From Isurus oxyrinchus (taxonomy: Eukaryota), in assembly GCA_026770705.1 (NCBI GenBank), contig JANJGN010000026.1, positions 39,184,001 through 39,248,000 of the forward strand: a stretch of 64,000 nt of DNA, read 5' to 3'. The notes beneath the pieces were generated by a model, which was given only the letters and a program-made list of their open reading frames with translations, was not told the DNA's origin and ran no database searches. The position numbers and the translations under genes are program-made. This document shows positions 30,111 to 53,994 of this stretch, one piece after another; position 1 is the stretch's first letter, and every line of letters starts with the position of its first letter.

Positions 30111-30160
30111 CACCACGTTCAGGTTTTTGTACAGCTGTCTCCGTGCTCTGTATCACTGTG

Positions 30161-30469
30161 CTGTGCGTTGACTCAGTGCACAGTAATACACAACGGAGTC
30201 GCTCAGTTGTAGTCTGGAGACAGTTAACCGGCTGATTTTCTCAGCAGGATCGATCGAAGCAGAAATTCTCCCTCCCACAGCGTTTTCTTTATTTTCTTCT
30301 CCTGCAGTGTGTCTCTGAAGCAGATAATCCGGAGCCTGGCCGGGAGACTGACGGTACCAGTGTACTGTGTACTGACAGAACCTGACCGAATATTCACATC
30401 TTAAAGTAATGGTGTCACCGGCAGGATACGTTTGTACAGGCGGATTCTGGGATATCATGGAACTGGAAT
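30161..30469 (-). CDS. NAR-TCR supporting TCR delta V, cassette 1 (leaderless, intact)
   Basis: Phase-1 acceptor CTCCAG|AT. Reads DSSSMISQNPPVQTYPAGDTITLRCEYSVRFCQYTVHWYRQSPGQAPDYLL..DSVVYYCALSQRT, with an extra Cys in CDR1. Consensus RSS CACAGTG-23-ACAAAAACC (30122-30160). Confidence 0.93.
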
Positions 30470-31899
30470 CTGGAGGATAAAAAACCGAACATTATCTTTT
30501 AGTTTTGCCACTGTTTGTCCAGCTAAATATATCAATCACGTCAATAGCTCTGCTTTTTGCAGTAATTTTATTTGCTGGAAGCCTGTTTGAACCGTGTTCA
30601 TTCTTACGAAATTATGAAGTGGGGAACTCTTCCAATTAGGACTGCACTGTCTGAATTGGTGTTGGGTACAGATTCTATTGTAACTTTCAAACGGGTAATG
30701 GATCTCTGCTGGAAATATTAATAAAAATATAGAGCAATGGAGAAACTTCATGGGCAGTGGGAACAATTGGATTGCACTTTTAAAGGGTCAGCGCCTACAC
30801 GATGGGCCGAATGTCATCCTTCCGTGCCGTATGATTCCATTAATTATAATACATTCCCGTTTCTATTTTCCCTGGTGAGAGACAAACCCGAGGGAACATT
30901 TGATGTTCAGCGAGGCAACCAGTTTCCAAAAGAAAACATGTTTGTCCGAGAGGAACACAGCTGTGCACAGCCAGATCCAACACAAACTGATGGGTATCAT
31001 CAGCACCGATTGGGCAAAACCGAGAGTGAGCACAAGTGGTCAAAGGCCAATCATTTCCTGCGGTTTAGAAGTACACGGAAATTTCTATTTGCCTTTTGCT
31101 CTATTTCTCTATGTTCTATTAATAGTGTCCTATTTTCTCCAGTTCAGCTTAATTTCAAATATGTGCAATTAATTTCATTTTATTTCTTTAATTTCACATT
31201 CCCTTTATTTCACATTTTCTTTGTGTTGTTTGCGCTTTCTGCAATCGTGGGACCTCGCCCCAAGTTCTCTAAGTTGTCGGTTGGGTTCAGTCTGTTCACT
31301 TTCCGCAGTGGTTTTACTGTTACTCACTGGGAACTGCCTCTTCCGGTTCTCTGACAATTTCAATTCTTTCCGCACGTTAACTGATTGTCTCCCGGGTTCA
31401 CTGGGCGGAGTTTTCTCTCAATTATCGAGGAAGAAGAATGCGGAAGAGGAATGGACCATTCAGCCTGTGTATATGATCAATTCCAGCCGCACCTCACCAG
31501 AAATCTAATTGACCATTTACATCCAGCTCCCTGTATCAGTCTGTTCCGTTCTCCCTCCTGTATTCAAATAAATATATCAATAGCAACTGCTCCAACCACT
31601 CCCTGAGGCAGCAAGTTCCACACTCCGACCTGCCTTTGTTTAAATACATTTGTCTTAAATGATTTATTTGTTTTGTTCATGAATGTCATATGGTGACGGC
31701 TATTGATTTAGACTCAGCCATAAATGAGCAATTTATCCACACTAAAACCGATTATTGTTTAAAATATTTCTATGGATTCTCCTTGTGGTTCTGTTTTCCA
31801 GAAAAAAGAGACCCAGCCTGTTCAATCTTCCCACAGAGATGTGGGAATTGTTGCTGATTTATTTTCTGAGGAGTGTAAGAAATTAAAGCAGAGAATCCG

Positions 31900-32420
31900 A
31901 TCAATATAAACAGGAGCCGCCATATCACTATTCAAATCTGCTCAGACATTCAGTAATATTCTGGCTGATTTACAACCTCAACGTCACATTCCCGCACTCT
32001 CCCCATATCCCTGATCCTTTTAGCGTCCAAAAACTTATCGAATATTGTCTTGAATGCACACAGGTTTTGAACACCCACCGCTCTCTGAGTTACACAATGC
32101 CACAGATTCACAGCAATGGCTCTACTGAAGATATTTTTTCCTTCTCAGTTCTAATGGATGATTCTTTATTCTGAAGCGGTGTCCCCGAGTTCTATATTCT
32201 TCAGTCTGGGGAAACTACGACCTAGAATTTGCCCTGTCGAGGCCCTTCAGTGTATCACATGTTTCCATGAGATCATCTCTCATTCTTCTAAACTCTAGGA
32301 AATATCAACCGAGAAGACTAAATCTCTTCCCATTGGACAATCCCTTCATATCAGGAATCAGTCGGATAAACATTTGCTGCACCAATTCTATTACAGATTG
32401 ATCTCTGTAAGGGGACCAAA
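31900..32420 (-). mobile_element. CR1-type LINE 3' fragment in the J-to-supporting-V intron
   Basis: Same fragment is present at about 51250-51725, so it predates the cassette duplication. Confidence 0.7.
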
Positions 32421-33351
32421 CCTTCACAGCATTCCGGAGTGGAGTCTATTTCAGTCCTTCCCTCCATAAACCTCACCCACCTGGGGGTCGGATTGTACTT
32501 TGAAAGGCGCCCAGAAATCATCCAATCCCTCTCTCCCTTTCGATTAATTTTGTCTTGCTGGTTCTAAATGAGCATTCTCCTAGTTTATAATTGTTTCCTT
32601 ATGTTTCTGTTCTCCTTCATAAGATTAATGCATCATCCTCATTCTCTCACTGCACTGCGTTGCCTTAATTCACAGTAATCTGTGATACAGATAAATTACA
32701 GCAATCCCATCTCTCAAATATTTCCATTCAATATAGAGAAGCGTCTGCAGTTTCAAACTTTCACATTTCGGACTCAGGACGGGAAAGGAGAAGAGTGATT
32801 GGTTCTGCGAAGACAATTGAAAGAAATGGGGGGGACAATGTCACTAATTGCAGTCACAGATTGTCCAATAATAAAATTCAACCTAGACTCATATCAGGGT
32901 CTCTTATAACTGAAGCCCATTGTGTCACTCGCCCGTTTCTTTCCCGGGTCAGGTATTGAACGAGCCGCTGCAGTTATCCGAATGGCCGCAGTTGTGTTGA
33001 GTTTATTCACCGGGTACATCATTCACATTGCGCGGCTCGGACTGCAATCTGCTGCCCAGGGGAGAGCTCTGTGACCCCGCTTCCGGGCTCTAAGGGACAG
33101 ACAGAGCTTCCTCGGTCACAGTTAACACCGGGAGTGGAGTCCGGATTGCCGACAATCTCAGCTCGTTAAAAGCGATTCAGAGTGTGCGAGTCCGTGATGT
33201 TGATGTTGTCCCCGATGTGCCCGTTAAACCAATAATGGTCCACATTCCGTCAACTCCCACATCCCCTCAAACTCCACTGATATCAATAATAAACTGACTG
33301 TGAACATTACACGGGACAGGCTGTAAGTCGGCGGAGTTTGGTGTTACTTAC

Positions 33352-33404
33352 CGGCTGTGACAGTCACCACTGTCCCCGATCCATCCCGATAGTCAGTAAC
33401 CCAC
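33352..33404 (-). CDS. NAR-TCR J segment, cassette 1
   Basis: RSS GGTTGTTGT-23-CACTGTG (33405-33443). Reads WVTDYRDGSGTVVTVTA + G|GTAAGT. Phase 1 matches the supporting-V acceptor. Confidence 0.92.
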
Positions 33405-33785
33405 CACAGTGACACCGCTCTCAGTCTCCCCTGTACAACAACCAGGACTTCTCACCCTGCCGGAAAATCATCATCCGACAGTAGAAACTGCCCAATTATT
33501 CAGTGGATTTATATAAATTAACAATATTCAACCTTTCAAAGTCTCTGTCGTTTCAAACTGTTCTTTGTGAGGTCCTGAGCTCCGAGTAAATGGTCCCTGG
33601 AACGAGATGTTCGCTTGATATAAACTGAGAAAAATATCAAAGAAATATAAATGAATGGTGGTAATTACAATGAAATGTAACCAGATTACAGCGAAAATAA
33701 CATCAACCCGACAATTCACTATCCGGGCCCAGAGAATTTATATTGCGATCGTGGAGAGGTATTTGCTCAGGTGTCTTCTACTGTG

Positions 33786-33802
33786 ACTTTCCCATCCATC
33801 CA
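33786..33802 (-). CDS. NAR-TCR D segment, cassette 1
   Basis: TGGATGGATGGGAAAGT flanked by GGGATTTTT-12-CACTGTG and CACAGTA-12-GCAAATACC. Confidence 0.85.
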
Positions 33803-34194
33803 CACAGTGTTACAAGTCAGTAAAAATCCCCCGGGTTCTTGGTGAAATTTGGGGACATTAGTTAAACAGCGGGCACTGCGGTTCCCGGTTGCAGCAGTTA
33901 GACCAGGATCACATCTGGTGTCAGGAGTTTGCAAATGGGATCAGTCATTCCCAATCCCCACTCACTGACACCAATCCCAGGAAAGACATCACCATCCGCT
34001 CACATTCGGCATTTAAAAAGCTCAAGCTATTAACGGCAATAATCCAATCTTATTATAAACTAGTCTGTGAGGCAGACGGTGTGAGGCGGAACTGTGGGGG
34101 GTTTAACTGCAGAATTAACTCCGATTTCTCATTTGTTTCTGTGATAATCTGCAGTGAGTTTTTGTACCGTGGGAAGCCAAGACCCATCACTGTG

Positions 34195-34664
34195 GATCTG
34201 TAGTACTGAGCTTTACAGTAATAGGTGGCGGTGTCTTCGACTCTCAATTCCCGAATTTCCAGCGAAAATGTCTTTTCTGCTTTATTCACCGACACAACAA
34301 ATCTCCCCCCGCTGGAGATCCGCTTCCGCTCTGTCCCGGTCTGGTTTTGCCTGAAGAAATATCCATTTTCTAAATAATAATAGTAACCATTTAAAACACA
34401 GGTGATGGTGAGAGACTGACACTCCTTCCTGGTCACCGCTGTCGGGATCTGTGTCACTGACTGACTGAAAGAGCCTGGAAATTAAACAGAGATAGTTTAA
34501 TGGACCATCAGAGCCGAACCTCAGAATGGGGTTAAAACCCCGGACAGTGTCGGTAATTGGGATGGACTCGGGCGGCTTTATATTAACTCCACACAATGTC
34601 GGTTTGTTGATCGGTACTCACGGGGTATGCAGACACACAGGATGAAAGCAAGGAGGATTCCCAT
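34195..34664 (-). CDS. NAR-TCR V (IgNAR-like), cassette 1 (leader 34622-34664, V exon 34195-34474)
   Basis: MGILLAFILCVCIP|RSFSQSVTQIPTAVTRKECQSLTITCVLNGYYYYLENGYFFRQNQTGTERKRISSGGRFVVSVNKAEKTFSLEIRELRVEDTATYYCKAQYYR. VNAR-type CDR2 deletion (ISxGGR..VN) and extra FR1 Cys. RSS CACAGTG-22-ACAAAAACT (34157-34194). Confidence 0.93.
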
Positions 34665-35519
34665 CGTTCTGCTGCCTGGAGCTAAGGGTTTATATGACAG
34701 GGAGCTGGAGACTGCAGCCCTGGACTGCACTGGGAGACCGGACCTCAGAGCTGGACTGAAATACTTTAGCGGGATCGAGTTTATTTGCACAGGACAGTTT
34801 CGCTGAGATCATTGATGGGTCGCACGATTCCCGGGTCGCTGTCTAAGTGTTGCGTGAATAAGAGACAGGTTTTTAAAAGGAGGCTGCAATTTTCTGACTA
34901 TTCATTTGGGCTGTGATCCGGATGTGAAAGCCCCTCCCACAACACTCTGGTGTACAGAGGTGGGGGATGGGAGCTTTTCTTTCCGCCAGTTGTGCTGCCG
35001 CCTTCCTTTCCCCACAGTGCTGAACTGGGAGGTCGGAGCATGTGTTTGTATTGGGTGGTGTTTGCCTGTGAGCCCAGGACACCGAGAGAAACCCCCGACT
35101 TGCTCTTATTGTAATATTCCGGAGATTTCCCCTGTCATTTAGCCAAATGGTTCCTGCACTAGCCCTGCGGTGGGTTACATGTTAAATGGTGCTTAATTTC
35201 AGCCACGTTTGACTTCCAAATTGGGAATATTCAGAATTTCTGTTTGCAGTCACTGAGAATGAATGAAACGACACTCGGGAGGACAATAGACATTCGGGGG
35301 GTGTCTTTAAAGATCACAGTCACTACCTTCTGTTCTGAAATCTGTTTATGGTGTATAATTATCTCTCAACCAGCAACAGCAACACTCAGTCTAATAAACC
35401 CCGTGACAAGGCCGATGTTCGAGGCTTCACAAAGCTGACAGCGGAGTTCGGGAAAATGCTGCTCAACATTGCGTACAGGGACGGAAAGGCCATTAAAGGG
35501 CGAAACGGAAATTAAGAAC

Positions 35520-35850
35520 CGCAGCACGTCGCACAAACATGGCCGACAGTACGTCACAAAAACACGAACAACAGTGCGTCACACAAACCGGGCCGACAGT
35601 TTCGTCACACAAACATGGCCGACAGTACGTCACACAAACATAGCCGACTGTACGTCACAAAAACATGATCGACAGTTTCGTCACACAAAGATGATCGACA
35701 TTACATCACACAAACCTGGCCGACAGCTTTGTCACAACAACATTGCCGACAGTACGTAACGCAAACATGGCCAATAGTACTTCATACAAACATGGCCAGC
35801 TGTACGTCACACAAACACGATCGACAGTACGTCTCACAAACATGGCCGAT
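35520..35850. repeat. 25-bp minisatellite, about 13 copies (cacacaaacatggccgacagtacgt)
   Basis: Directly visible tandem units. Only about 2 units are present at the paralogous site (55490-55545). Confidence 0.9.
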
Positions 35851-35959
35851 GATTTGAGATGCAATGTATAAAACCCACATTTTTTTCTGCACGTCCGGCC
35901 AATTGCTGTCAGCTTTGTTAACGTGATAAAGTGCTGCTTTGAGAATAATAATTAGTGTA

Positions 35960-36930: not shown

Positions 36931-36974
36931 CTGGAATAATTGTGTACAACCAGGTACTGAGCTCATGTCATTTG

Positions 36975-39475: not shown

Positions 39476-39889
39476 GTACCTTGCTAAAGTGATTGGAATA
39501 AATGAACTAAGTCACGGAAGCAATTAGTAATTATGCCACTCCCTTTGACGTGTCTACTTCCTGTTATCTAGTCATAGTGCACAGTCGTTTCACGACTTTT
39601 ACCTCACTATACAATTATTATTTTCTCCCGCCTGTGTTTATCTATCCCTTCCTGACATAGACCCACACCATTTACCCCAGGCACTTCATATGTTACAGTT
39701 CCTGTGATCGAGTGCTGGTAATCCCCCCATTAGATTGAACGCGCACCCCCACACACACACCCACCCCGCACAACACAGACACGTACGCACAGACAGACAG
39801 GCACACACGCGCGCGCGCACACACACACAGATAAACAGACAAACGCACACACGGTGAGAACCACACACACATATACACACACTTTTCTG

Positions 39890-40255
39890 CAGCAGCTTAC
39901 CCCCTGCTGGACACTGCCGGAATCACACATACACCCGCACACGCACACACACACCTTCAGCGACTGCTGGACACTGCCATAATTTCACATACACACACTT
40001 GCGCACACACACACTTTTAGTAACCTACCCCCTGCTGGATATTGCCAGAATCACACACATGGGCACAAACACACACACAGCTTCACAATCTACCCTCTGC
40101 AGGAAACTGTCATAATCACATACAAACACGCAACTTTAGCAATCTGCCCTCTGCTGGACAGTGTCATAATCACACACACACACACACACACGCACACAAA
40201 CACACACATATCTTTAGCAATCTACCGTCTGCTGGATACTGTCATAATCACACAT
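39890..40255 (-). promoter_or_regulatory. Tandem array of about 6 CTCF-like motifs spaced by CA-rich DNA
   Basis: CCAGCAG(A/G)GGG(C/T)AG-type cores on the minus strand at about 39897, 39960 (partial), 40025, 40090, 40144 and 40222. Confidence 0.6.
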
Positions 40256-42040
40256 ACACACGCTCACACATCTTTATTTGTTTGTTAATAATGCTTTATT
40301 TTTATGATTTAGTGTCACTTTAAATGAAATATATAAAAATGCAATGTCCACAATCTTTACAATTGTGTTCGGGTGACGTCTCTCCACAGTAAGATAAATG
40401 AAAAATAAACCATTCCAGGGACGAAATACCGAGTTTGATAAATGCGACAAAGCAATTTTACCCAAATATACCGGCAGGTGGCGGGCTCGCCCCATTAGAA
40501 ATACCCGCACAGGCAGCGGAGAGGAATAATACTCAGTGACCATCAGAAGAACGATCCACTTAATCACCTGAAGGAAAACCTAAAGTTGTCGTGTCTGTTT
40601 GCCTATAAAAAAACAAAATGCAAACTAGACGAATCCCGAAAAGAACTAACATGCTAACATACGAAATAGGAGCAGGAGTAGGCCACTCGGCCCTTCGAGC
40701 CTGCTCTGCCATTCAATAAATTCATGGATGATCTGACTGTAATCTGAACAGCACATTCCCGCCTACCTCCGTTTCACATCCTTGGTTATCAAGAATATAT
40801 CTAGTTCTGCCTTAAAAATATTCAAAGGCTCCGCTTTCAGCGCCTTTTGAGGAAGAAAGTTCCACAACAGCCGGTGGAAAAAGAGTCTTTGAATATTTTA
40901 AAGGCAGAGCTAGATAGATTCTTGATTAACAAGGGTGTGAATGGTTACGGGGTACTGAGAAATAAATATTAATTGAACTGGGTAAAGGGGGAGAAAGAGT
41001 TCAGAATTCAGATGCAGAAAGTGTGGAGCGTGCTGCTGATAAAGAGTTAAAGAATCGCATTTAATTGAGTGGGACGCGGATTATTAAGCTCAGAAACAAG
41101 AATAAAGCTGCACACATCATTGCTGAGGGCACAGTTTAAACTCTTGGGTCGTTTTTGTGACCCTTCTTTCGTTTGGTGTTAACCTGGAAGTCAGTGTGTA
41201 GGATGGATTGTGAAAGATGTCGCCGGGATGAGAGGGGATAGTCCTGAGCAGAAACTTGAGCAACTGAAGATCTTTCCACCAGAACACAGAATATTAAGAA
41301 GTGGACTGACTGACTTGTACCCAATCATGGAAGGTTTGGAAAAGGTTAAAAAGAGAGTGAATCAGTGGGTAACTGGATGGCATCATTGAAGTTTCCCACT
41401 ATTGTAGTGGAGGGAGAGATTTGAAGATGTTTTTGTGTTTTGAGCACTGGACTGTTAGAGGATGTTATGGCCCATGAGAAACAGAGATGAAAACAAAATA
41501 TTAAGTATTTTTAAAAGACGAATAGTTCATTGTTTGACCAGTAAAATGAATTTTTAAGAAGTCAAAATATACGAATGGTGGACAGATGATTCAGAATAAG
41601 TGTATAACTCTATATGCCAACCAGCACACATGGGTAATGGCCCGAACTTGCTCTCTTTGTGTTGTGAGCTGACGACTGGCTCTTTTCAGTTATAAAGAGA
41701 ACAGAGCACAGACATTATGAAACAATATAACATGGTGCTACATAAAGGAAGCAGAGAGGTTCGGAAACAGTGACAATTCAAGTGGTCTAAGTTTTGAGAA
41801 ACCTCCAATCACTAACTGGCACCATGAGTAACTTCATATGACAACATCCCATAATTGCCCAATCGATGAGAATGTCGCCCATCAGTCTCACATTCAAGAG
41901 GAGAATGTAAAGCTCTCCCGTCTCCTCTCCACTTCCCCACCATCTTGGACTCGGCAGCAAGTCCCAGTCTACAAATCAGGCCCTGATTGCTTCGCCTTTT
42001 GTCAAGTTTCATCGTCATAAACAGAAACTTCGGCAAAGAC

Positions 42041-42396
42041 CTGATTCCAGTTGGAGCCCTGTTGCTGTTGACATTGTGTGAGTTTATTTACATCATCAGA
42101 TGCATTCTTTTTTACTAATCTCTCAGTACCCCGTGGTGGCTCAGTGGTTTTTCTTTTGTTCAGAGCCATTCAGTGTGAGGATCAAGGCTGTCGGCTCTCC
42201 GTTGGCTCAGGTTATACCGTAGCCTGGTACCGACAAACACTGACAGGGTCTGCGACATTTATCACCTCCATTATCCAGGAGAATGTGACCAAAGGACGCT
42301 ACACATTAACCTTTGACCGAGCAAAGAGGTCCAATACCATCTCTATAGATGATACCGTAGACCAGGACGCTGGAATTTATCACTACTGGAAGAAGA
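42041..42396 (+). pseudogene. Divergent V pseudogene (inverted orientation)
   Basis: Leader has ATG replaced by CTG (LIPVGALLLLTL|GTGAGT). V reads AIQCEDQ[FR1 deleted]GCRLSVGSGYTVAWYRQ..DAGIYHYWKK. RSS CACAGTG-23-ACAATATCT (42397-42435). Confidence 0.85.
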
Positions 42397-42764
42397 CACA
42401 GTGGGACAAAGAGCGGATCTGGCTGTACAATATCTTGTTCACTGCTGTGTCTCCGCTGCAGCTTTAATCTTTCCCCAAACAAGGACCTTTAGAAATGCTG
42501 GCGATGTTCAGAAACACTACTTTCCCATGTTTTAATTTTTATCTGGATGAAGTTATAACATCCTACCGCTCCTACTACAGATACAGAGCATCGAAAAGTA
42601 CTAAATAAAATTTCTGATGTTCGTTTGTTCAACGTAAAGAGATACACAGAAAAAATAACACCGCCTCTCAGATACATGGACAGTAGATATGCGAGAGAAA
42701 GATTGATAAATGATGAGAAAAATAGACATAAATAGAGAGGAATGTGGATAGACAGACAGGCAGA

Positions 42765-42766: not shown

Positions 42767-42832
<66 letters not shown>
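42765..42832. repeat. (GATA)n microsatellite
   Basis: Directly visible. Confidence 0.95.
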
Positions 42833-42833
<1 letters not shown>

Positions 42834-42910
42834 TAGTATATTCTGCCAATATCGGCAAACGCTTTATCCTTGCATGTATAACTAAGCTGATGTTACTAAT
42901 GTTTTCACAG

Positions 42911-43191
42911 TTGTTCCTTGTCACTGGAAGACATTTCAGATATCGATGTATCGGGGAACTGTCGGACAAACTATTTCGCTTCATCACCGTGCTACATTCG
43001 CTGTAAATGATCTTGTATTCTGGTACCAGCAATTCTCCAATCAAGCTCCCTAGTATCTCGTTTCCACATACAGAGATCAAAGCGTTAAGGGAAGGTTTAA
43101 AATATTTGTGGACCGTGAGAAAAGCTCCACCAGTCTCACTGTTAACACAGCTGAGCTGTCAGACGCTGCGATGTATTACAGTATGGTGAGG
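42911..43191 (+). pseudogene. TCR delta-like V pseudogene (inverted orientation)
   Basis: VGQTISLHHRATFAVNDLVFWYQQFSNQAP*YLV..ELSDAAMYYSMVR. Both Cys are lost and there is an in-frame stop. RSS CACGGTG-23-AAAATAACT (43192-43230). Confidence 0.88.
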
Positions 43192-46100
43192 CACGGTGAA
43201 GCAAAGAGACAAAGAGCCTGTAAAATAACTCGCTCGACATGGAGACTTAGGAGACAACAAGTCCATTGGCTTTGGAAGTGAGTGTGATTGAAGGAAACCC
43301 GCTTTAAAAATGCAAAGTTCATCATGCGAATAAATTACTGCCATAAAAATATATTTTATTATTTCTACTCGTAGAAAAATACTCTGACACATTCGCTTAT
43401 TGAAATTTGGTTGACATTCTTATTTTATGATTAGGGAGCTCTGAAGCCACTCATTAGAGATTGACAATCCAACCTCATCGGTTGTGGATTTACGAATTTA
43501 TTAATGAGAAGTTCATCTGTGTGTGCAAATTACATGTACTGTACTAATGATGTAGGGATGCCAGAAAACCGAGACAAATAATCCTGCAAATAATGAGAAA
43601 TAGCAAATGTAGCAAAAGTAAAACAATGAAAAATAGAATCAGATGCAGTAGTAATAAAATCTGAGCAAAAAAACATAATAATATGCCATAATAATTATCC
43701 AGCAATATCATGCAGCAATATTCAAGAATAAATTGAGAATTGTTGTTTCACGGATAAGATTCCACTAGATAGTTGTTCAAGTCCTTTTCTGTGTCGACAG
43801 CTGACAGAGCCTTCAATTCACCGCTGGACAGGTAGGATTACGGCTCGGCACAGTGCCTGACTCTCAAGTCAACAGCGGTTTCAACTTATCATCCAGCTTC
43901 CCGGATGTAGGGTTGGCACTCCAGCCCCTCCTACACGCAGATCCTTTTTATTCATTCGTTCACTGGATTTAGGCGACATTGGAGCAACAGCATTTATTGT
44001 CCATCACTAATTTGCTTTCAGATGGGGTGGCGAGCCGCCACTTACCGACTGAGTGGTTTTCTGGGTCATTTAAGAAGGCGGTTAATGTTCAACCACATTG
44101 CTGTGGATTTGGAATCATACATGGGCCGGAGTAGATTTCCTTCCCTGAAGGATGTTACTAAACCGGTTAGAGTTTATTGCGATGATCCTGATCACTATTC
44201 CTACAATACTATAACTTTATTCCAAAGTTATTTATTATCTCCATTTAAATTAATTAGTAGAATTGGAACTCATATCCCTGGGTCATTGGCTCAGGCCTCT
44301 GGATCTTTAACCCAGTGACATAAGCATGAGATTCCGTTAGAAGAACATAACCTGGTTCCCATGAAAGTTCTATGTTAAACTGTACATTCCTTTGCTCAGC
44401 CTCAACGATTTTTCTGCAAACACGTCTGACCTCAGTTATCTACAGGGGTTTTTGTCACGTATGAAACAAAAGAACGTTTCCTTCTTCCTTCAAGCAGCTC
44501 TGGCCAGATAAAATGTTTCAGAACACAGCGTAGCAAAACCGTCCATTAGAACAAAGTAATGGCGTCTCAGTAAGACTCACTCCAGAAGTAAATATTAACC
44601 TGGTTTTCTCATGAAAGTGACAAAGAACTGAAACATAATTAATTCTGTTATCTTATTCGGTAAATATAATGATTGACCTTGTAATTAAAAACATTTGACA
44701 CCAGTGATTCTTCTCATCAGATCTCCACATTGATTTTTAGACTGCATTTAGTTCATAACTTCATGGCTTCCATTATGATGGCAAACCCACAATGAGACAA
44801 ATGAAAGGACAATTTTAACGCTGAATGGGAAATAATAATTGACGGGCGTAATGTAAGGGAGGCAAACTCAAAGGGAAGATTACTATTGTGGCTATGCCAC
44901 TAAACTATTAATTCAGTAGCCTGGGTAAATGTTTCAGGGACATCAAACATAAAAGTCAGGAGCAGTTAGGTTTTCCGGCCCCTCGAGCCTGCTTCACCAT
45001 TCAATAAGATCATGGTTGATCTGACTATGGCCTCAATTCCACATTCCCACCTGCCCCCGATATCCTTTGACTCCCATGGGGCAGGAACCGTTTTTGGGCC
45101 GCATCCAATGAATGGCCTGTTTTACACTCGGTCCGATTTCTACTCCTCTGATGTCAATGGGACAGAGAACTGGATCGAGTATAAAACTGGCAGCCAGCTT
45201 GCTTAACAGCACAAGGCCAATTTCACCCCTCAACCATTTCAAGCAGAAGATAATGATAATGCAGCTCATTCCACATCCCCCCAGTATTGTATTTCACCTG
45301 AAAACAATGGAACCATTATTCAAAGCAGGTATAACACCGGCTATTACACTCGCATTTTTAGACTAACATAAAATTAAAAATCTACCCAAAGTTGGTATCG
45401 TTGGAAATGTATTCTCAAATTCTCACTAGTAGAAGAATAACAGTGAATGAAAGGTTTCGTAAAAGTTACCAGAATATTACTTTTTAGAAATCAATCTAGC
45501 GACCTGAGCATGGGTATGGTGTAAAGGAATATATGGAGAGTATTGGGTGTTTCAGAGACTTAATTATGAATGCTTGAGTTGAAAAGAAAGAAATATTTAA
45601 ACGATGGAAAGTTAGTGTACCCCTAAGCAAATGAGTTCAAACAAATACCTGGAAATGACTATGTCACATTGTTAATTATCAATGACAGAACCAGCTTCAT
45701 AAAACAGTGATTTGTCCAATTGATGATTTAGTCCAAAGATTTACCCGGAACTCCAATAGCAGCAAATATTGGACAGTAAATAGCATAAACTACGCCAGAT
45801 ATTCGGCAGTGCATTTTCTATGAGAAGCGATGGTCTCTGCTGGTGACATTTGGTCACAGAGATTCTATGTTACAAGCTCAAACAGACCCTCATTTGTACT
45901 ATAGGAATTCTACAGAGAGACAATTAGCTTCTATAATTATTTACAGTTACTTGAAGAAATAGATTCAGCAATTATTTCCCATGTTCTTTTTGGGAGGTGG
46001 TAGAATGTTGGTACACACTTGGGAGACGACTATCGAGTCTTGAAGTCTCATGTAGCCCAATGTCGTTTTGAATGTGATTTGTTAATATTTGGGCAGATCT

Positions 46101-46489: not shown

Positions 46490-47400
46490 AAGTCACAGAA
46501 TCACAGAGCGCAGAAGAGGCCCTTCGGCCCATCGAGTCTGCACCGACACGTGAGAAACACCTGACCTACCTACCTAATACCATTTACCAGCACTTGGCCC
46601 ATAGCCTTGAATGTTAAGACGTGCCAAGTGCTCATACAGGTACTTTTTAAAGGATGTGAGGCAACCCGCATCCACCACCCTTCCAGGCAGCGCATTCCAG
46701 ACCGCCACCACCCTCCAGGTAAAAAGGTTTTTCCTCACATCCCCCTAAACCTCCTGCCCCTCACCTTGAACTTATGTCCCCTCGTGACTAACCCTTCAAC
46801 TAAAGGGAATAGCTGCTCCCTATCCAATCTGTCCATGCCCCTCATAATCTTGTACACCTCGATCAGGTCGCCCCTCAGTCTTCTCTGCTGCAATGAAAAC
46901 AACCCAACTCTATCCAACCTCTCTTCATAACTTAAATGTTTCATCACAGGCAGCATCCTGGTGAATATCCTCTGCACCCCCTCCGGTGCAATCACATCCT
47001 TCCTAACTGCACACAGTACTCCAGTTGTGGCCTCACCAAGGTTCTATAGAACTCCAACATGACCTCCCTACCTCTAGAATCTGTGCCTCGATTGATAAAG
47101 GCAAGTGTCCCATATGCCTTTTTCGCCATCCAACTAACATGCCGCTCCACCTTCAGAGATCTGTGGACACACACGCCAATGTCCCTTTGATCCTCAGAAA
47201 TTCCTAGTGTCATGCCGTTCATTGAATACTTCCTTGTCAAGTTACTCCTTCCAAAGTGCATCACTTCACACTTTTCATGGTTAAATTCCATCTGCCACTT
47301 ATCTGCCCATTTGACCATCCCGTCTATATCTTCCTGTAGCCCAAGACACTCAACCTCACTGTTAACCACCCGGCCAATCTTTGTGTCATCCGCATCTTAC
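46490..47400 (-). mobile_element. CR1-type LINE 3' end (relatively young)
   Basis: WADKWQMEFNHEKCEVMHFG..LVRPQLEYCVQ..RLRGDLIEVYKIM..TRGH, the CR1 RT C-terminal region. Confidence 0.9.
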
Positions 47401-48110: not shown

Positions 48111-48145
<35 letters not shown>

Positions 48146-49279
48146 ACATAGCAGGCTGTGCATATTTGATTTGTATGCGGGTACGAAGACTCGATTTATA
48201 CGAAAAGTGACTTCAAAAATAAACATTCGGTCTTAATGGACAAAAGCGATGGATTTGTACAGGCGCCAATGTGCGGAAAATTCTTGCAGAGTGCCGCCCA
48301 CACTCCCTGTGTCATATATAGTGAGCTTTCCCAGCCGCAGTGAACTGTTGGAGCCTCTGCCTTCCACGACCCATTCACCAAGGAAGCGAATCGAAACTCA
48401 ACCTCCTGTTCTTCCTCTCTACCCTTCTACCAAATGGAAACAGTTTATTTTGCTCTAAAATAAATCTAATAATCCAGTTCTGTTGAAGGGTCATGAGGAC
48501 TGGAAACGTCAACTCTTTTCTTCTCCACCGATGCTGCCAGACCTGCTGAGTTTTTCCAGGTAATTCTGTTTTTATTTTTTGTTTTGATCTACTTGGCTCA
48601 GAGACACATGGTTTTGAACACTCGATCAGATCTACCCTGCACCTTCCATTCTCTATGGAGAACAAACCCAGTTTCCCCAATCTATCTAATTAACTGAAGT
48701 TCTGCATCCCTGGGACGATTCTGGTCAACTTCCCTGCCACTTTTCTAAACCCTTCACATCCTTCCTAAAGTGCGATTCCCGGAAGTGGACACAATGCTCC
48801 AGTTGAGGGGGAACCAGTGCTTTCCTAAGAGGATCAGTAGCATTTCCTTTCCTTTGGACTCCATGCCGCTGAAACCGATGATCCCGGATGTTTAAGCGCC
48901 ACTTTCTCAGGCTGTCAGGCCACCTTCAACCATTTATGCCCAAATAGAGCATATCGTTTGTTGAAGAACGGATAATTGAATGAATTATTTTAGCAGGAGT
49001 ATTGTAGGCGACTCGATTTATAAAAATACTTAAGGCTCTAAGGAGCCAGAAGGAATGTGCGAACTTGATGGGTTTAATGGCTTTTTGCTGTGCTAGAACA
49101 TTATAAACTCAATTGTAAATACATTCGTGGAGATTAGGTGATTCCCCCCACCCCACCCTCCCCCCACCCCCTTCTATGTGTGTGCCTGTGTGTATATATG
49201 TGTTTGTGTATATGTATTTGTGTGTATACCTGTGTTTGTGTGTATGTGTGTGCTCCTTTCAACTTAATCCCGAAAATGA

Positions 49280-49437
49280 ACAATTTGGACTCTTTCCGTG
49301 CCTTGTATCACGGTGTGTCTGTAATCCCATTATGTTCAAGTTTTTGTACGGCTCTCTCCGTGCTCTGTATCACTGTGTCTGTATTCCCACCATGTTCAGG
49401 TTTTTGTATAGCTCTATCCGTGCTCTGTATCACTGTG
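49280..49437 (-). other. Triplicated 23-RSS behind supporting V 2
   Basis: CACAGTG-23-ACAAAAACC (49399-49437), CACAGTG-23-ACAAAAACT (49339-49377), and CACCGTG with a decayed nonamer (heptamer 49309-49315). Confidence 0.88.
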
Positions 49438-49743
49438 CTGTGCGCCGACTCAGTGCACAGTAATACACAGCGGAGTCGCTCAGTTGGAGTTTGGGGATAT
49501 CTAACTGGCTGATTTTCTCGGCAGAATCGATAGAAGCAGAAATTCTTCCCCCTGCAGCGTTTTCTTTATTCTCCTCTCCTGAAGTGTGCCTCTGAAGCAG
49601 ATATTCCGGAGCCTGTCCGGGGGACTGACGGTACCAGTGTACTGTGTACTGACAGATACCTGAGTATTCACAGTTTAAAGTAACGGTGTCACCGGCAGGA
49701 GCGGTTTGTAGAGGCGGATCCCGGGAAATTACGGAACTGGAAT
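49438..49743 (-). CDS. NAR-TCR supporting TCR delta V, cassette 2 (leaderless, intact)
   Basis: DSSSVISRDPPLQTAPAGDTVTLNCEYSGICQYTVHWYRQSPGQAPEYLLQRHTSGEENKENAAGGRISASIDSAEKISQLDIPKLQLSDSAVYYCALSRRT. CDR1 Cys present. Not in the supplied ORF track. Confidence 0.93.
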
Positions 49744-51249
49744 CTGGAGGATAGAAAAATGAACATTTTATTTTTGTTAAGCCTCTGTTTGTCCAGGTGA
49801 ATTCAATCGCGTGAATAGCTCTGCTTTTTGCAGTAATTTTATTTGCTAGAAGCCTGTTTGAACCGTGTTCACTGTTATTGAAATATGATCAAATAGGGAA
49901 TGAGGTGATATTTTAGTTTACATGGCGAAATCTTGCGAAGGGGACTGCACTGTCTGAATTGGTGGTGGGAACAGCTTCCATAGTAACTTTCAAACGGGTA
50001 ATGGGTCTGTGCTGGAAATGTAAATACAAATATAGAGCGATGGAGAAAATTCATGGACAGTGGGAAAAATTGGATTGCACTTTTAAAGGGTCAGCACCTA
50101 CACAAGGGGCCGAATGTCATCATTCCGTAGATAATTCTATGAATTATATTACATTCCCGTTTCTATTTTCCTTGGTGAGACACAAACACGAGGGAGCATT
50201 TTATGCTCAGCGAGGCAACCAGTTTCCAAAAAAAAAATGTTTGTTGCAGAGAAACACAGCTGTGTGACATCACTGAGCACAGCAAGATCCAACACAAACT
50301 GATGGGCATCATCAGCACCGATTTGGCAAAACAAAGAGTGAGAACCAGTGGTCAAAGGTCAATCATTTACTGCGCTTTTAACTACTCCGGGATTTCTCTC
50401 TGCCTTTTGCTGTATTTCTCTGTTCTATCAATAGGGTCGTATTTTCTCCAGTTCAGCTTAATTTCAAATATGTGCAATTAATTTAATCTTATTTCTTTAA
50501 TTTCACATTCCCTTTATTTCACATTTTCTTTGTGCTGTTTGCGCTTATTGCAATCGTGGGAACTTGCCCCAAAGTCTCTCAGTTGTCGGTTGGGTTCAGT
50601 CTGTTCAGTTTCCGCAGTGGTTTGACTGTTACTCACTGGGAACTGCCTCTTCCGGCTCTCTGACAATTTCAATTCTTTCCGCACACTGACTGATTCTCTC
50701 ACGGGTTCACTGGGTGGAGTTTTCCCTCAATTTTACATTGTCGGGGAAGAAGAATGCGGAAGAGGAATGGACTATTCAGCCTGTGTATATAATCAATTCC
50801 AGCCGCACCCCACCAAAAATCTAATTGGCCATTTACATCCAGTTCCCTGTGCTGGTCTATTCCGTTCTCCCTCCTGTGTTTTCAAGTGTTCCAATAAATA
50901 TATCAATACTTTCCCCATACACTCCCTGAGGCAGTAAGTTCCACATTCTGATCTGCCTTTGTTTAAATTCATTTGTCTTAAAATGTTTTATTTGTTCTGT
51001 TAGTTACTGTCATATGTTGACGGCTATTGCTTTGGGCTCAACCACAAATGACCAATTTATCCACATTAAAACCGTTCAGTATTGAAAGAATTTCTATGGA
51101 TTCTCTTTGTGGTTCTTTTTTCCAGAAAAAAGACACCCAGCCCGTTCAATCTTCCCAGAGAGATGTGGATTGTTGCTGATTTCTTGTTTCATCAAATAGA
51201 GAATGGAATCAACAGAAGAAGGAGCCGCCAGATCACCTTTCAAACCTGC

Positions 51250-51725
51250 TCAGCCATTCAGTAATATCCTGGCTGATTTACAACTTCAACGTCACATTCC
51301 TGCACTGCCCCCATATCCCCTGTTCCGTTTAGTGTCTGAAAACCTATCGAATATTGTCTTGAATGCACACGGATTATGAACACACACCACTCTCTGAGTT
51401 ACAGCCACAGATTCACAACAATGGTTCTACTGAAGATATTTTTTTCCTTCTCAGTTCTAATGGAAGACTCTTTATTCTGAAGCTGTGACCCCGAGTTCTA
51501 TACTCCTCAGTCTGGGGAAACTCCGACCCAGAATCTGCCCTGTCAAAGCCCTTCAGTATATTATATGTTTTAATGAGATCACCTCTCATTCTCCTAAACT
51601 CGAGGAAATATATACCAAGACGACTAAATCTCTTCCCATTGGACAATCTCTTCATCTCGGGAATCAGTCTGATTAACATTTGCTGCACTCCTTCCAATGC
51701 AGATTGATCTCAATTCAGTAAGGAG
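51250..51725 (-). mobile_element. CR1-type LINE 3' fragment
   Basis: EGVQQMLIRLIPEMK..RRMRGDLIKTYNILKG..TRGH. Confidence 0.8.
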
Positions 51726-52670
51726 ACGAAAACTTTACACAGCATTCCAGACTGGAGTCCATTTCAGTCCTTCCCTCCAGAAACCTCACGCATCCCGGGG
51801 TCGGATTGTACTTTGAAAGGCGCCCAGAAATCATGCAATACTTCTCTCCCTTTCGATTAATTTTTTTCTTGCTGGTTCTAAATGAGCATTCTCCTAGTTT
51901 ATAATTGTTTCCTTTTGTTCCTATTCTCCTTATAAGATTAATGCATCATCCTCACTGTCTCACTGCACTGTGTTGCTTACATCACAGCAATCAGATATAC
52001 AGATAAATTACAGCAATCCCATCCCTCAAACATTTACATTCAATATAGAGAAGTGTCTGCAGTTCCAAACTTTCACATTTCGGTCTGAGGGCGGGAAACG
52101 AGGAAAGTGATTGGTTGAAGACAATTGAAAGAAATTGGGGGGGGGGGGGGGGGGGGAGGTGACAATGTCACTAATTTCAGTCACTGATTGTCCAATAATA
52201 AAATTCTATCTGGACCCACATCAGGATCTCTTCTGTCTGGAGTCCGTTGTGTCACTCTCCCGTTTTTCTCCCGGGTCAGGTCTGGAACAAGCCGCTGCAG
52301 GTATCCGAACTGGCCGCACTTGTGTTGAGTTTATTCACCCGGTACCCCATTCAAATTGCGCGGCTCGGACTGCAATCTGCTGCCCAGGAGAGAGCTCTGT
52401 GACCCCGCTTCCGGGTTCTAAGGGACAGACAGATCTCCTTCGATCACAGTTAACACCGGGAGTGGAGTCCAGATTGTGGACAACCTGCGCTCATTAAAAG
52501 CGATTCAGAGTGTGAGAGTCCGTGATGTTGATGTTGTCCCCATTGAACAAACAATGGTCCACATTCCTTCAACTCCCACATCCCACCCAAACTCCACTAA
52601 TATCAATAATAAACTGACGATGAACATTACCCGCGACAGGCTTAACCCGGCGGGATTTGGTGTTACTTAC

Positions 52671-52728
52671 CGGCTGTGACAGCCACCACTGTCCCGGATC
52701 CATCCGCATGATCATATTTATAAACCAC
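52671..52728 (-). CDS. NAR-TCR J segment, cassette 2
   Basis: RSS AGTTGTTGT-23-CACTGTG (52729-52767). Reads VVYKYDHADGSGTVVAVTA + G|GTAAGT. Confidence 0.92.
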
Positions 52729-53110
52729 CACAGTGGCACCGCTCTCAGTCTCCCAGGTACAACAACTACCGACACCTCAGCCTGCCGGGAAATCATCATC
52801 AGACAGTAGAAACTGTCCAATTATTCAGCGGATTTATATAAGCAAACAATATTCAATCTTTCAAAGTCTCTGTCAATTCAAACTGTTCTTTGTGAGGCCC
52901 TGAGCTCTGAGTAAATAGTCCCGGAAACGAGATGCTCGCTTTATATAAACCGGGAAAAATATGAAAGAAAGATAACTGAATGTTGGAAATTGCAATTAAA
53001 TGTCACCAGATTACAGCAATAATAACATCAGCCCGATAATTCACTATCCGGACCAGGAGTATTTATATTGTGATCGTACAGAGGTATTTGCTCAGGTCTC
53101 TGCCACTGTG

Positions 53111-53128
53111 ACTTCCCCTTACCCCATG
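53111..53128 (-). CDS. NAR-TCR D segment, cassette 2
   Basis: CATGGGGTAAGGGGAAGT. 3' RSS CACAGTG-12-GCAAATACC; weaker 5' 12-RSS at 53129-53156. Confidence 0.83.
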
Positions 53129-53516
53129 CACTGTGCTACAATTCAGTATAAGATCCTCCGGGCGTTTGTTGAGATTTGGGGACATCAGTTAAACAGCGGG
53201 TGCTGCGGTTCCCGGTTCCAGGTGTTGGACCAGGATCACATCTGGTGTTAGGGGTTTGTAACTGGGATCAAACATTCCCAATCCCCATTCACTGACACCA
53301 GTCCCAGGAAAGACATCATCCGCTCACACTCGGCATTTATAAAAGTCAAGATGCTAACAGCAATAATCCAATCGCCTTATAAACTAGACTGTGAGGCAGA
53401 CGGTGTGAGGCGGAACTTTGGGGGTTAAACTGCAGATTAACTCCGCTATTTCATTTGTTTCTGTGATAATCTGCAGTGAGTTTTTGTATCGCGGGATGCC
53501 GAGGCCCATCGCTGTG

Positions 53517-53994
53517 TGTCGTACTGGTACTGAGCTTTACAGTAATAGGTGGCGGTGTCTTCAACTCTCACATCCCGAATTTCCAGCGAAAATGTCTTTT
53601 CTGCTTTATTCACCGACACAATAAACCTCCCCCCGCTGGAGATCCGCTCCCACTCTGTCCCGGTCTGGGTTTGTCTGAAGAAATCCCCGCCGGTCAAAGG
53701 ACGAGCGAAAAAACCACCATAGAAAACACAGTTGATGGTGAGAGACTGACACTCCTTCCTGGTCACCGCTGCCGGGGTCTGTACCACTGACTGACTGAAA
53801 GAGTCTGGAAATTAAACAGAGATAGTTTAATGGACCATCAGAGCCGAACCACAGAACGGGGTTAAACCCCAGGCAGTGTCTGTAATCGGGATGGACTCGG
53901 GCAGCTTTATATTAAATCCACACAATGTCGGTTTGTTTGATCGGTACTCACGAGGTAAACAGACACACAGGGTGAAAATAAGGAGGATTCCCAT
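53517..53994 (-). CDS. NAR-TCR V (IgNAR-like), cassette 2 (leader 53952-53994, V exon 53517-53804)
   Basis: MGILLIFTLCVCLP|HSFSQSVVQTPAAVTRKECQSLTINCVFYGGFFARPLTGGDFFRQTQTGTEWERISSGGRFIVSVNKAEKTFSLEIRDVRVEDTATYYCKAQYQYD. RSS CACAGCG-22-ACAAAAACT (53479-53516). Confidence 0.93.

What the first reader, a model, noticed from the sequence alone, without database searches (positions are those of the whole stretch)
30122..53994. Two intact NAR-TCR cassettes encoding doubly rearranging two-V-domain TCR delta chains
Seen twice: leader, VNAR-like V (22-RSS), D (12/12), J (23-RSS, DGSGT motif, phase-1 donor), a roughly 2.9-kb intron, then a leaderless V-delta (23-RSS). The NAR V has an extra FR1 Cys (KECQS) and the supporting V an extra CDR1 Cys (FCQY/ICQY). 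Known: this is the NAR-TCR architecture described in nurse shark, where those Cys are proposed to link the two domains. The RSS logic is IgH-like, not TRD-like. The system itself is known; these germline cassettes may be unannotated.
Basis: partly seen in the sequence, partly recalled or inferred. Interest (0 to 1): 0.8.

Follow-up and report, generated by a model that had tools for sequence, protein, structure and literature searches.

The report
Two intact shark NAR-TCR gene cassettes
The window holds two complete, tandemly duplicated germline cassettes of the known shark NAR-TCR, a T-cell receptor delta chain with an extra antibody-like V domain on top; this is a clean example of a described system, not a new one.

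Summary
On the minus strand there are two about 5-kb units, 34664-30122 and 53994-49399. Each carries a leader exon, an IgNAR-like V exon with a 22-bp-spacer RSS, and one D flanked by 12-bp RSSs. A J follows, with a 23-bp RSS, a DGSGT motif and a phase-1 donor. After a 2.9-kb intron comes a V exon with no convincing leader, a phase-1 acceptor and a 23-bp RSS.

Every hallmark published for NAR-TCR is present. The NAR V has an A-B loop Cys and Phe in place of the core Trp. The supporting V has a CDR1 Cys and no leader. Exon by exon, the cassettes map in the same order onto two-V-domain RefSeq models from seven shark species, which use the same J|supporting-V junction. Those models are unnamed or misnamed as Ig heavy chains.

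The two copies are 86-88% identical, introns included, yet have no frameshift or stop, so both look maintained.

Not shown here: transcription, rearrangement and linkage to C-delta. The window has no constant exon, and the listed runs (RNA only by the tool's guess) held only paralogues.

This scan had already noted many NAR-TCR cassettes elsewhere in this genome. Verdict: new members of a known kind, of modest interest.

The parts
53952..53994 (-). Cassette 2 leader exon (MGILLIFTLCVCLP plus 1 base; donor c|gtgagt, phase 1). TATAAA lies at 54024-54019 and an octamer-like GTGCAAAT at 54115-54108, both upstream.
   Evidence: donor 7/9, hydrophobic core; 93% to the Carcharodon and Cetorhinus model leaders
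53517..53804 (-). Cassette 2 NAR-type V exon (acceptor ttccag|a). Has KECQS, FFRQ in place of WYRQ, and YYCKAQ.
   Evidence: V-set E 1.1e-7; 91% to the white shark model
53479..53516 (-). Cassette 2 NAR V RSS: CACAGCG (one off consensus) / 22 bp / ACAAAAACT
53083..53156 (-). Cassette 2 D element. Order: nonamer GGATCTTAT, 12 bp, heptamer CACAGTG, D CATGGGGTAAGGGGAAGT (53128-53111), heptamer CACAGTG, 12 bp, nonamer GCAAATACC.
   Evidence: read directly
52671..52767 (-). Cassette 2 J. RSS AGTTGTTGT / 23 bp / CACTGTG at 52767-52729. J coding 52728-52671 (VVYKYDHADGSGTVVAVTA plus 1 base); donor g|gtaagt.
49744..52670 (-). Cassette 2 J-to-supporting-V intron (2,927 nt). It holds a decayed retroelement-like fragment shared with cassette 1 and no further V exon.
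49438..49743 (-). Cassette 2 supporting V exon without a leader (acceptor cctccag|at, phase 1). CDR1 Cys in GICQY; ends YYCALSRRTA.
   Evidence: V-set E 6.9e-16; 87% to the Cetorhinus model
49339..49437 (-). Cassette 2 supporting V 23-bp RSS (49437-49399), followed by a second intact tandem copy (49377-49339) and a third, degenerate copy further on.
34622..34664 (-). Cassette 1 leader exon (MGILLAFILCVCIP plus 1 base). TATAAA lies at 34694-34689 and GTGCAAAT at 34790-34783, both upstream.
34195..34474 (-). Cassette 1 NAR-type V exon (KECQS, FFRQ, YYCKAQ)
   Evidence: V-set E 1.3e-7; VNAR E 1.3e-20
34157..34194 (-). Cassette 1 NAR V RSS: CACAGTG / 22 bp / ACAAAAACT
33758..33830 (-). Cassette 1 D element. 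Order: nonamer GGGATTTTT, 12 bp, heptamer CACTGTG, D TGGATGGATGGGAAAGT (33802-33786), heptamer CACAGTA, 12 bp, nonamer GCAAATACC.
   Evidence: read directly
33352..33443 (-). Cassette 1 J. RSS GGTTGTTGT / 23 bp / CACTGTG at 33443-33405. J coding 33404-33352 (WVTDYRDGSGTVVTVTA plus 1 base); donor g|gtaagt, phase 1.
30470..33351 (-). Cassette 1 J-to-supporting-V intron (2,882 nt), with no further V exon inside
30161..30469 (-). Cassette 1 supporting V exon without a leader (acceptor cctccag|at, phase 1). CDR1 Cys in RFCQY; ends YYCALSQRTA.
   Evidence: (V-set E 3.4e-14)
30122..30160 (-). Cassette 1 supporting V RSS: CACAGTG / 23 bp / ACAAAAACC

Best explanation
These are two tandemly duplicated germline cassettes of the NAR-TCR form of the T-cell receptor delta chain. 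They are structurally intact and lie in the same orientation as conventional TCR-type V segments.

Proposed mechanism:
1. In a developing T cell, RAG joins the NAR V (22-bp RSS) to the single D (12-bp RSSs on both sides) and the D to the NAR J (23-bp RSS). Because V and J both carry long spacers, the 12/23 rule makes the D obligatory.
2. Independently, the supporting V (23-bp RSS) joins to D-delta and J-delta segments that lie outside this window.
3. Transcription starts at the NAR V promoter, the only convincing leader in each cassette.
4. The leader splices to the NAR VDJ exon. The phase-1 donor of the NAR J splices across the 2.9-kb intron to the phase-1 acceptor of the supporting V, making an Asp codon. 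The delta J then splices to C-delta.
5. The product is a delta chain of NAR V, supporting V and C. The spare Cys at the base of the NAR V (A-B turn) and the spare Cys at the top of the supporting V (CDR1) can staple the two V domains together.

Shown here: all sequence elements, their frames and phases, family membership of the domains, collinearity with two-V models of other sharks, and frame conservation since the duplication. Inferred: rearrangement, transcription, pairing with C-delta, and the disulfide.
For: - Anatomy was read directly.
- RSS matches are far above chance: 10 found against 0.04 expected.
- All four exons are V-set.
- The NAR V is closest to solved IgNAR VNARs, E 1e-20.
- The best single-stretch hits of the supporting V include two human V-delta-1 receptor chains (4mng_E, 3omz_A; 66-68 bits) on a par with an antibody scFv (68.5 bits).
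- The hallmarks listed in PMC1845163 are all present.
- AlphaFold models place Cys18 just before strand B, and Cys31 in the loop between strands B and C.
- Eight RefSeq models from seven shark species are leader, NAR V, J (DGSGT..VTA), Asp, supporting V. Our leader, V, J and supporting V exons align to them in that order at up to 91% identity.
- The copies are 86-88% identical throughout. About 4.5 frameshifting indels would be expected in 636 coding nt at the non-coding rate; none is seen, P about 0.01.
- The supporting V has dN/dS 0.39.
- There is no Ig or TCR constant exon and no extra V exon between J and supporting V.
Against: - No transcript of either cassette was seen. The five listed runs (labelled 'RNA?' by the tool, a guess) held next to none of the stretch. 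Four were laid; their contigs matched only an intronic repeat and paralogues at about 91% identity.
- No C-delta, D-delta or J-delta lies in the window, so linkage is not shown.
- The NAR V heptamer of cassette 2 is CACAGCG, which may weaken recombination.
- The NAR V exons have an overall dN/dS of 0.90, and the exons are no better conserved than the introns. Substitution data alone therefore do not prove constraint on the NAR V.
- The RefSeq models are predictions made on germline DNA, and their RNA support could not be inspected.
Confidence: 0.88

Rival explanations
1. One or both cassettes are silent or decaying duplicates: they look intact but are no longer rearranged or expressed. Cassette 2 is the weaker candidate for function.
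For: - Cassette 2's NAR V heptamer is CACAGCG.
- Its supporting V is followed by a duplicated RSS that could act as a decoy.
- NAR V dN/dS is 0.90, and exon identity (86-87%) is not above intron identity (88-94%).
- No contig of the laid runs matched either cassette at 95% identity or more.
- Several neighbouring V segments are pseudogenes.
Against: - All eight coding exons are open, and all splice sites and the CAC of every heptamer are kept after 12-14% divergence.
- No frameshifting indel is seen where about 4.5 are expected.
- The supporting V has dN/dS 0.39.
- By eye, the NAR V amino-acid differences cluster in CDR1 while the framework motifs are invariant across species.
Confidence: 0.08
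2. The V-D-J units are IgNAR or orphan Ig-type clusters whose J splices to Ig constant exons, and the neighbouring V-delta is an unrelated conventional segment.
For: The NAR V is most similar to IgNAR VNARs among solved structures. The RSS arrangement is Ig-heavy-chain-like. An octamer-like motif lies in the promoter.
Against: - There is one D, not three.
- No constant-domain ORF lies anywhere in the 64 kb.
- The NAR V has the A-B loop Cys and Phe for Trp, which mark NAR-TCR rather than IgNAR.
- The next exon after J is a V with a phase-matched acceptor and no convincing leader.
- The same J|V junction appears in eight models of other sharks.
Confidence: 0.02
3. The parts are also, or mainly, used separately. 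The NAR V could join directly to a D of another cassette or of TRD, giving a one-V chain. The supporting V could be expressed alone from a cryptic leader as an ordinary V-delta.
For: - The 22/23-bp RSS of the NAR V is compatible with any 5' 12-bp D RSS downstream on the same strand.
- Weak leader-like ORFs with phase-1 GT donors lie 215/244 bp upstream of both supporting V exons (MKFLHCSIFLLIFPAEIHYPFE and MNFLHRSIFVFTFPAQTHYPFE).
Against: - The candidate donors are poor (AAA|GTTACA, 5-6 of 9, against 7 of 9 for the real leaders).
- That stretch is the least conserved part of the intron.
- The unpaired CDR1 Cys of the supporting V makes sense only with a NAR V partner.
- No RNA evidence exists either way.
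Confidence: 0.05

Closest known systems
Nurse shark NAR-TcR (Criscitiello, Saltis and Flajnik 2006, PNAS 103:5036). The paper is not held in the library; its features are taken as restated in PMC1845163, PMC5931798 and PMC12227049.
   Same: The chain has two V domains made by separate V(D)J rearrangements. The N-terminal V is IgNAR-related, with its own leader, an A-B loop Cys and no core Trp. The supporting delta V has no leader and a CDR1 Cys. The cassettes lie in a TCR V array.
   Different: These are different species and paralogues. Details not checked against the original paper: 22-bp spacers on the NAR V, the variant heptamer and tandem RSS copies in cassette 2, and the 5-kb duplication unit.
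RefSeq two-V-domain gene models of other sharks: P0012 Carcharodon carcharias 'immunoglobulin gamma-1 heavy chain-like', P0014 Cetorhinus maximus, P0015 Mustelus asterias, P0016 and P0017 Stegostoma tigrinum, P0005 and P0007 Hemiscyllium ocellatum, P0006 Chiloscyllium plagiosum
   Same: They show the same exon order (leader, NAR V, J, supporting V), the same J|Asp|supporting-V junction and the same hallmark residues. Identity to our exons ranges from 54% to 91% by exon and species.
   Different: They are automatic predictions on germline DNA. At least the lamniform and Mustelus models end in ..RTAQ, which in this window is where the frame meets the TGA overlapping the RSS heptamer. None is named as NAR-TCR. 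One, P0017, lacks the CDR1 Cys.
IgNAR heavy-chain clusters
   Same: The V domain family is shared (VNAR E 1e-20), the J ends similarly in GTVVTV, and the RSS logic is Ig-heavy-chain-like.
   Different: From established knowledge, IgNAR has three D segments, its own constant exons and a core Trp, and is secreted by B cells. Here there is one D, no constant exon, Phe for Trp, and a V exon after the J.
TCR-mu of marsupials and monotremes
   Same: It is also a three-domain TCR chain, with an unpaired N-terminal antigen-binding V stacked on a supporting V (PMC3457774).
   Different: It is regarded as convergent. TCR-mu uses VH-related V genes and its own clusters, and in marsupials the supporting V is joined in the germline.

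Membership tests
NAR-TCR | The N-terminal V is related to IgNAR V | tested here: met
   The best PDB sequence hits are VNAR domains, E 1.3e-20 down to about 1e-13.
NAR-TCR | The NAR V has a typical leader peptide | tested here: met
   A 43-nt leader exon with a hydrophobic core, a gtgagt donor and a 147-nt intron is present in both cassettes.
NAR-TCR | Cys in the A-B loop of the NAR V | tested here: met
   KECQS is present in both cassettes, in all 4 hits and in all 8 models. In the model, Cys18 lies two residues before strand B.
NAR-TCR | The canonical Trp of the WYRK motif is absent from the NAR V | tested here: met
   Both cassettes read FFRQ. FF(K/R)Q or FLRQ is conserved in the relatives.
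NAR-TCR | The NAR V, D and J are separate segments with RSSs (first rearrangement) | tested here: met
   V 22 bp, D 12/12, J 23 bp.
NAR-TCR | The associated delta V lacks a leader and is entered by splicing from the NAR J | tested here: met
   The acceptor is cctccag|at in phase 1 and matches the phase-1 J donor. No leader exon with a good donor lies in the 2.9 kb upstream. Caveat: weak leader-like ORFs exist.
NAR-TCR | Conserved Cys in CDR1 of the associated delta V | tested here: met
   RFCQY and GICQY. Cys31 lies in the B-C loop of the model (low confidence). It is present in 7 of 8 models of other sharks.
NAR-TCR | The supporting V rearranges separately (second rearrangement) | tested here: inconclusive
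   An intact 23-bp RSS follows both supporting V exons. The partner D-delta and J-delta segments are not in the window.
NAR-TCR | The mRNA reads NAR VDJ, supporting VDJ, C-delta | tested here: inconclusive
   No listed run held the cassettes; only paralogous contigs were found. RefSeq models of relatives contain the J|supporting-V junction, but none reaches a C domain.
NAR-TCR | Located in the TCR delta locus, linked to C-delta | not testable with these tools
IgNAR cluster | Three D segments and IgNAR constant exons downstream of J | tested here: not met
   There is a single D. No C-domain ORF or Pfam hit is found in the window.
TCR-mu | VH-derived N-terminal V in a mammalian TCR-mu cluster | tested here: not met
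   The V is VNAR-like, not VH-like, and the relatives are all sharks.

The most novel reading that the evidence does not exclude
The two cassettes might not act only as closed units. All segments face the same way, and the long-spacer V RSSs fit any 12-bp D RSS. The upstream cassette's NAR V or supporting V could therefore join the downstream cassette's D, and the supporting V could be used alone from a cryptic leader. That would give hybrid, one-V or three-V delta chains beyond the described two-V form.
Probability: 0.12. Interest if true: 0.5.

Novelty: new member of a known kind. Interest (0 to 1): 0.3.

Why it matters
NAR-TCR is one of the few natural receptors in which a free-standing, antibody-like single V domain sits on a T-cell receptor. 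It also bears on whether the IgNAR V arose in a TCR or an Ig locus.

Exact germline maps are what repertoire analysis, cDNA assignment and evolutionary comparison need: exon borders, RSS spacers, D sequence, splice phases and promoter motifs. This report also shows that public annotation of at least seven shark genomes carries such genes under anonymous or wrong names. The biology itself is already described, so the gain is in annotation, not in concept.

Tried and rejected
- RNA test. The look-up of sequencing runs listed only five runs of the same species label (labelled 'RNA?', a guess), each holding about none of the stretch. I laid four of them at 90% likeness. They gave an intronic repeat at 32258-32299 and three paralogous contigs at about 91% identity. 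One of these begins exactly at the V-exon acceptor, 34474, which fits a spliced paralogue. No joint was reported. The result is inconclusive.
- A word search with the supporting V exon alone found nothing in its length band. That says nothing about longer relatives, which one search then found.
- The original 2006 paper and three other papers were not held. The supplement of PMC12227049 with NARTCR V coordinates is not held either.
- A bacterial-type promoter scan was irrelevant.
I stopped that step, so only the overall ratios are given.
- IgNAR cluster and TCR-mu were rejected as family assignments (see the membership test).
Full report
**Observation**

Everything lies on the minus strand, so transcription runs from high to low coordinates. 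Reading base by base gives two units with the same layout.

| Element | Cassette 2 (upstream) | Cassette 1 (downstream) |
|---|---|---|
| Leader exon (43 nt, donor c\|gtgagt, phase 1) | 53994-53952 | 34664-34622 |
| Leader intron | 147 nt | 147 nt |
| NAR-type V exon | 53804-53517 | 34474-34195 |
| V RSS | CACAGCG / 22 / ACAAAAACT | CACAGTG / 22 / ACAAAAACT |
| D, with 12-bp-spacer RSSs on both sides | 53128-53111 (18 nt) | 33802-33786 (17 nt) |
| J RSS | AGTTGTTGT / 23 / CACTGTG | GGTTGTTGT / 23 / CACTGTG |
| J coding | 52728-52671 (VVYKYDHADGSGTVVAVTA) | 33404-33352 (WVTDYRDGSGTVVTVTA) |
| J donor | g\|gtaagt | g\|gtaagt |
| Intron to supporting V | 2,927 nt | 2,882 nt |
| Supporting V exon (acceptor cctccag\|at) | 49743-49438 | 30469-30161 |
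| Supporting V RSS | CACAGTG / 23 / ACAAAAACC | CACAGTG / 23 / ACAAAAACC |

**More than chance**

- All four V exons pass Pfam's V-set cut-off (E 1.3e-7, 1.1e-7, 3.4e-14, 6.9e-16).
- The heptamer/23/nonamer pattern with at most 1 mismatch occurs 8 times in the window, against 0.01 expected from shuffles. The 22-bp version occurs twice, against 0.03 expected. All ten sit at the 3' end of a V-like ORF or at the 5' end of a J.

**Identity of the domains**

- The NAR V exon finds IgNAR VNAR domains as its best solved relatives (8hgi_C E 1.3e-20, then about thirty more VNARs).
- In that alignment, the Cys of KECQS falls in the turn just before strand B. The AlphaFold model (pLDDT 78) puts strand B at residues 20-26, so Cys18 is in the A-B connection at the base of the domain.
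- The FR2 motif is FFRQ: the core Trp is replaced by Phe.
- The supporting V is a generic TCR/Ig V. Its best single-stretch hits include two human V-delta-1 receptor chains (4mng_E, 3omz_A; 66-68 bits) at about the same score as an antibody scFv (68.5 bits), so the PDB search does not separate TCR from Ig V.
- Its third Cys (RFCQY or GICQY) lies in the loop between strands B and C, that is CDR1, in a low-confidence model (pLDDT 61).
- Each domain therefore has exactly one Cys beyond the canonical pair, one at the bottom of the upper domain and one at the top of the lower domain. This fits the interdomain disulfide proposed in the literature (PMC1845163), but it is geometry by inference only.

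**Definition in the literature**

PMC1845163, citing Criscitiello et al. 2006, lists the marks of NAR-TcR:
- the NAR-TcR V has a typical leader, a Cys in the a-b loop and no Trp in the WYRK motif
- the associated TcR-delta V has no leader and a conserved CDR1 Cys
- the two V domains are made by separate VDJ rearrangements

PMC5931798, PMC3457774, PMC3149040 and PMC12227049 describe the same system and place the V-NAR clusters in the TCR-delta locus of all cartilaginous fish. Every sequence-level mark is met here.

**Comparison with other sharks**

- The word search with NAR V1 found only four short relatives, the best 80% identical.
- The supporting V alone found none in its length band.
- Searching with the Chiloscyllium punctatum hit, which widened the length band, returned RefSeq models of 229-258 aa. 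They come from Carcharodon, Cetorhinus, Mustelus, Stegostoma (two), Hemiscyllium (two) and Chiloscyllium plagiosum.
- Their sequences read leader, NAR V, a short junction, DGSGT(V/M)VTVTA, Asp, then S(S/P)S.. and a supporting V.
- In at least the lamniform and Mustelus models the protein ends in ..RTAQ. In this window, that is where the frame meets the TGA overlapping the RSS heptamer.
- I compared our exons one at a time, never joined. They align in the same order:

| Our exon | Position in the models |
|---|---|
| Leaders | 1-14 |
| NAR V | 16-107 |
| J | about 110-130 |
| Supporting V | 127/132-232 |

- NAR V2 is 91% identical to the white shark model, and supporting V2 is 87% identical to the basking shark model.
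- All eight models keep the A-B Cys and the Phe motif. Seven keep the CDR1 Cys.
- The splice I infer from phase and signals is therefore the one the NCBI pipeline chose in seven other species. I could not see what RNA support those models have.
- The models are named 'uncharacterized protein', 'immunoglobulin gamma-1 heavy chain-like' or 'Ig heavy chain Mem5-like'. None is called NAR-TCR.

**Duplication and selection**

- A self-comparison shows that 30111-35064 and 49388-54389 form one duplicated unit of about 5 kb. It is 86-88% identical across promoter, exons and introns, and the roughly 14 kb between the copies is unrelated.
- Both introns carry the same decayed retroelement-like fragment, so it predates the duplication.
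- Exons are not better conserved than introns: 86-87% against 88-94%.
- Overall dN/dS is 0.90 for the NAR V and 0.39 for the supporting V.
- By eye, the NAR V differences cluster in CDR1, which also differs by two codons, while the framework motifs are invariant across species.
- Indels are more telling. There are 34 events in 4,069 non-coding nt, only 15% of them multiples of three. That predicts about 4.5 frameshifts in the 636 constrained coding nt, and none is seen (P about 0.01).
- The in-exon indels are one of 6 nt and one of 3 nt in the CDR1 loops, plus 2 nt and 5 nt at the V 3' end and J 5' end, which recombination trims anyway.
- Both copies therefore look maintained, the supporting V clearly so.

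**Context**

- tblastn with all V types finds exactly two NAR V and two supporting V exons, and nothing V-like inside either J-to-V intron. These are the plain two-V form, not the variants with germline-joined extra V exons that this scan noted elsewhere in the genome.
- Downstream on the same strand there are conventional TCR-type V segments with 23-bp RSSs. One is intact with its own leader (about 27205-26909). Two are pseudogenes, with RSSs at 12280 and 1266.
- No ORF has a C1-set signature. Pfam finds only LINE endonuclease and reverse-transcriptase remnants in the larger ORFs.
- So nothing in the window offers the J donors an Ig constant exon. Equally, C-delta is not in view.

**'Leaderless'**

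- I scanned the whole intron for ATG-started ORFs of 10-30 codons that end at a GT in phase 1. The scan recovers the true NAR leaders (donor 7 of 9).
- For the supporting V it finds only weak candidates. One is MKFLHCSIFLLIFPAEIHYPFE / MNFLHRSIFVFTFPAQTHYPFE at 215/244 bp upstream, with donor AAA|GTTAC(A/T), 5-6 of 9. The other is a second ORF near 31001/50312 that has a phase-1 GT only in cassette 2.
- The first lies in the least conserved stretch of the intron.
- They may be relics of the ancestral V-delta leader. Nothing suggests they work.

**RNA**

No listed run held the stretch, and the tool's 'RNA?' label for the runs is a guess. Contigs from four runs of the same species label matched only a repeat and paralogues at about 91% identity, and no joint was reported. 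Expression of these two cassettes is therefore untested.

**Mechanism**

See the best explanation. The NAR part has the arrangement V long spacer, D 12/12, J long spacer. From established knowledge, this is the arrangement at the J-proximal end of shark IgH and IgNAR clusters and of tetrapod IgH, and it differs from TRD (V 23, D 12/23, J 12). It forbids a direct V-J join.

The supporting V keeps the 23-bp RSS expected of a V-delta. J donors and V-exon acceptors are both phase 1, as throughout Ig and TCR genes, so any J-to-V-exon splice stays in frame.

**Rivals**

- Silent or decaying copies: 0.08, cassette 2 being the weaker copy.
- An Ig-type cluster: 0.02.
- Separate use of the parts: 0.05, and not exclusive with the main reading.

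**Novelty**

The system is known. Its germline layout has been described since 2006, and NARTCR V segments were mapped in four elasmobranch genomes in 2025 (PMC12227049). This scan had also already met many NAR-TCR cassettes on other DNA of this genome. What is added here is an exact map of two intact members, evidence that both are maintained, and the note that homologues in public annotations are unnamed or misnamed.

**Left out or blocked**

- The look-up of encoding contigs and the protein Atlas were closed.
- The large representative search was not used, because family membership was not in doubt.

Noticed in passing
window 49280-49437 (-): The 23-bp RSS of supporting V 2 is followed by a second intact copy exactly 60 bp on (49377-49339) and a third, degenerate copy. 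Cassette 1 has a single RSS. Cleavage at the second copy would leave the first RSS, with its in-frame TGA, in the coding end.
   Followed up: partly
window 30686-30751 and 49989-50054 (-); also near 31001 and 50312: Leader-like hydrophobic ORFs with weak phase-1 GT donors lie upstream of both supporting V exons. They may be relics of the ancestral V-delta leader. They sit in the least conserved part of the intron.
   Followed up: partly
window 34783-34790 and 54108-54115 (-); 34689-34694 and 54019-54024 (-): An octamer-like GTGCAAAT lies about 120 bp upstream of each NAR V ATG, and TATAAA lies about 25-30 bp upstream. This is an Ig-type promoter layout. The two copies are duplicates, so they do not count as independent evidence.
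   Followed up: no
window 26909-27205 (-) with leader near 27320: An intact conventional V with its own leader exon and a 23-bp RSS (CACACTG). Its FR2 reads QGLEWI, a VH-like motif, so it may be an Ig-like V within the TCR array.
   Followed up: no
window 1267-1560 (-) and 12281-12580 (-): Two TCR-type V pseudogenes with good 23-bp RSSs. One has a stop where the core Trp should be. The other lacks the first Cys and the Trp, and has a stop in place of the second Cys.
   Followed up: partly
window 42078-42467 (+), 42964-43194 (+), 10224-10474 (+): V-domain relics on the opposite strand. They score below Pfam's cut-off or are frameshifted, and have no RSS. One pair lies between the two cassettes.
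   Followed up: no
window 32100-32470 and 51410-51700 (-); 46735-47369 (-); 27559-28206 (-): Retroelement remnants. The same fragment sits in both J-to-V introns and is a high-copy repeat in the laid contigs. A reverse-transcriptase piece lies between the cassettes, and an endonuclease ORF lies just downstream of cassette 1.
   Followed up: partly
window 34386-34474 (-): A 224-nt contig of run X5 matches at 91% identity. Its match starts exactly at the first base of the V exon and diverges at CDR1. This fits a spliced transcript of a paralogous NAR-type V.
   Followed up: no
window 52136-52158 (-): A run of about 20 C in the intron of cassette 2 is absent from cassette 1. GT/CA-rich simple repeats lie at 39686-40323 and 49138-49260.
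   Followed up: no
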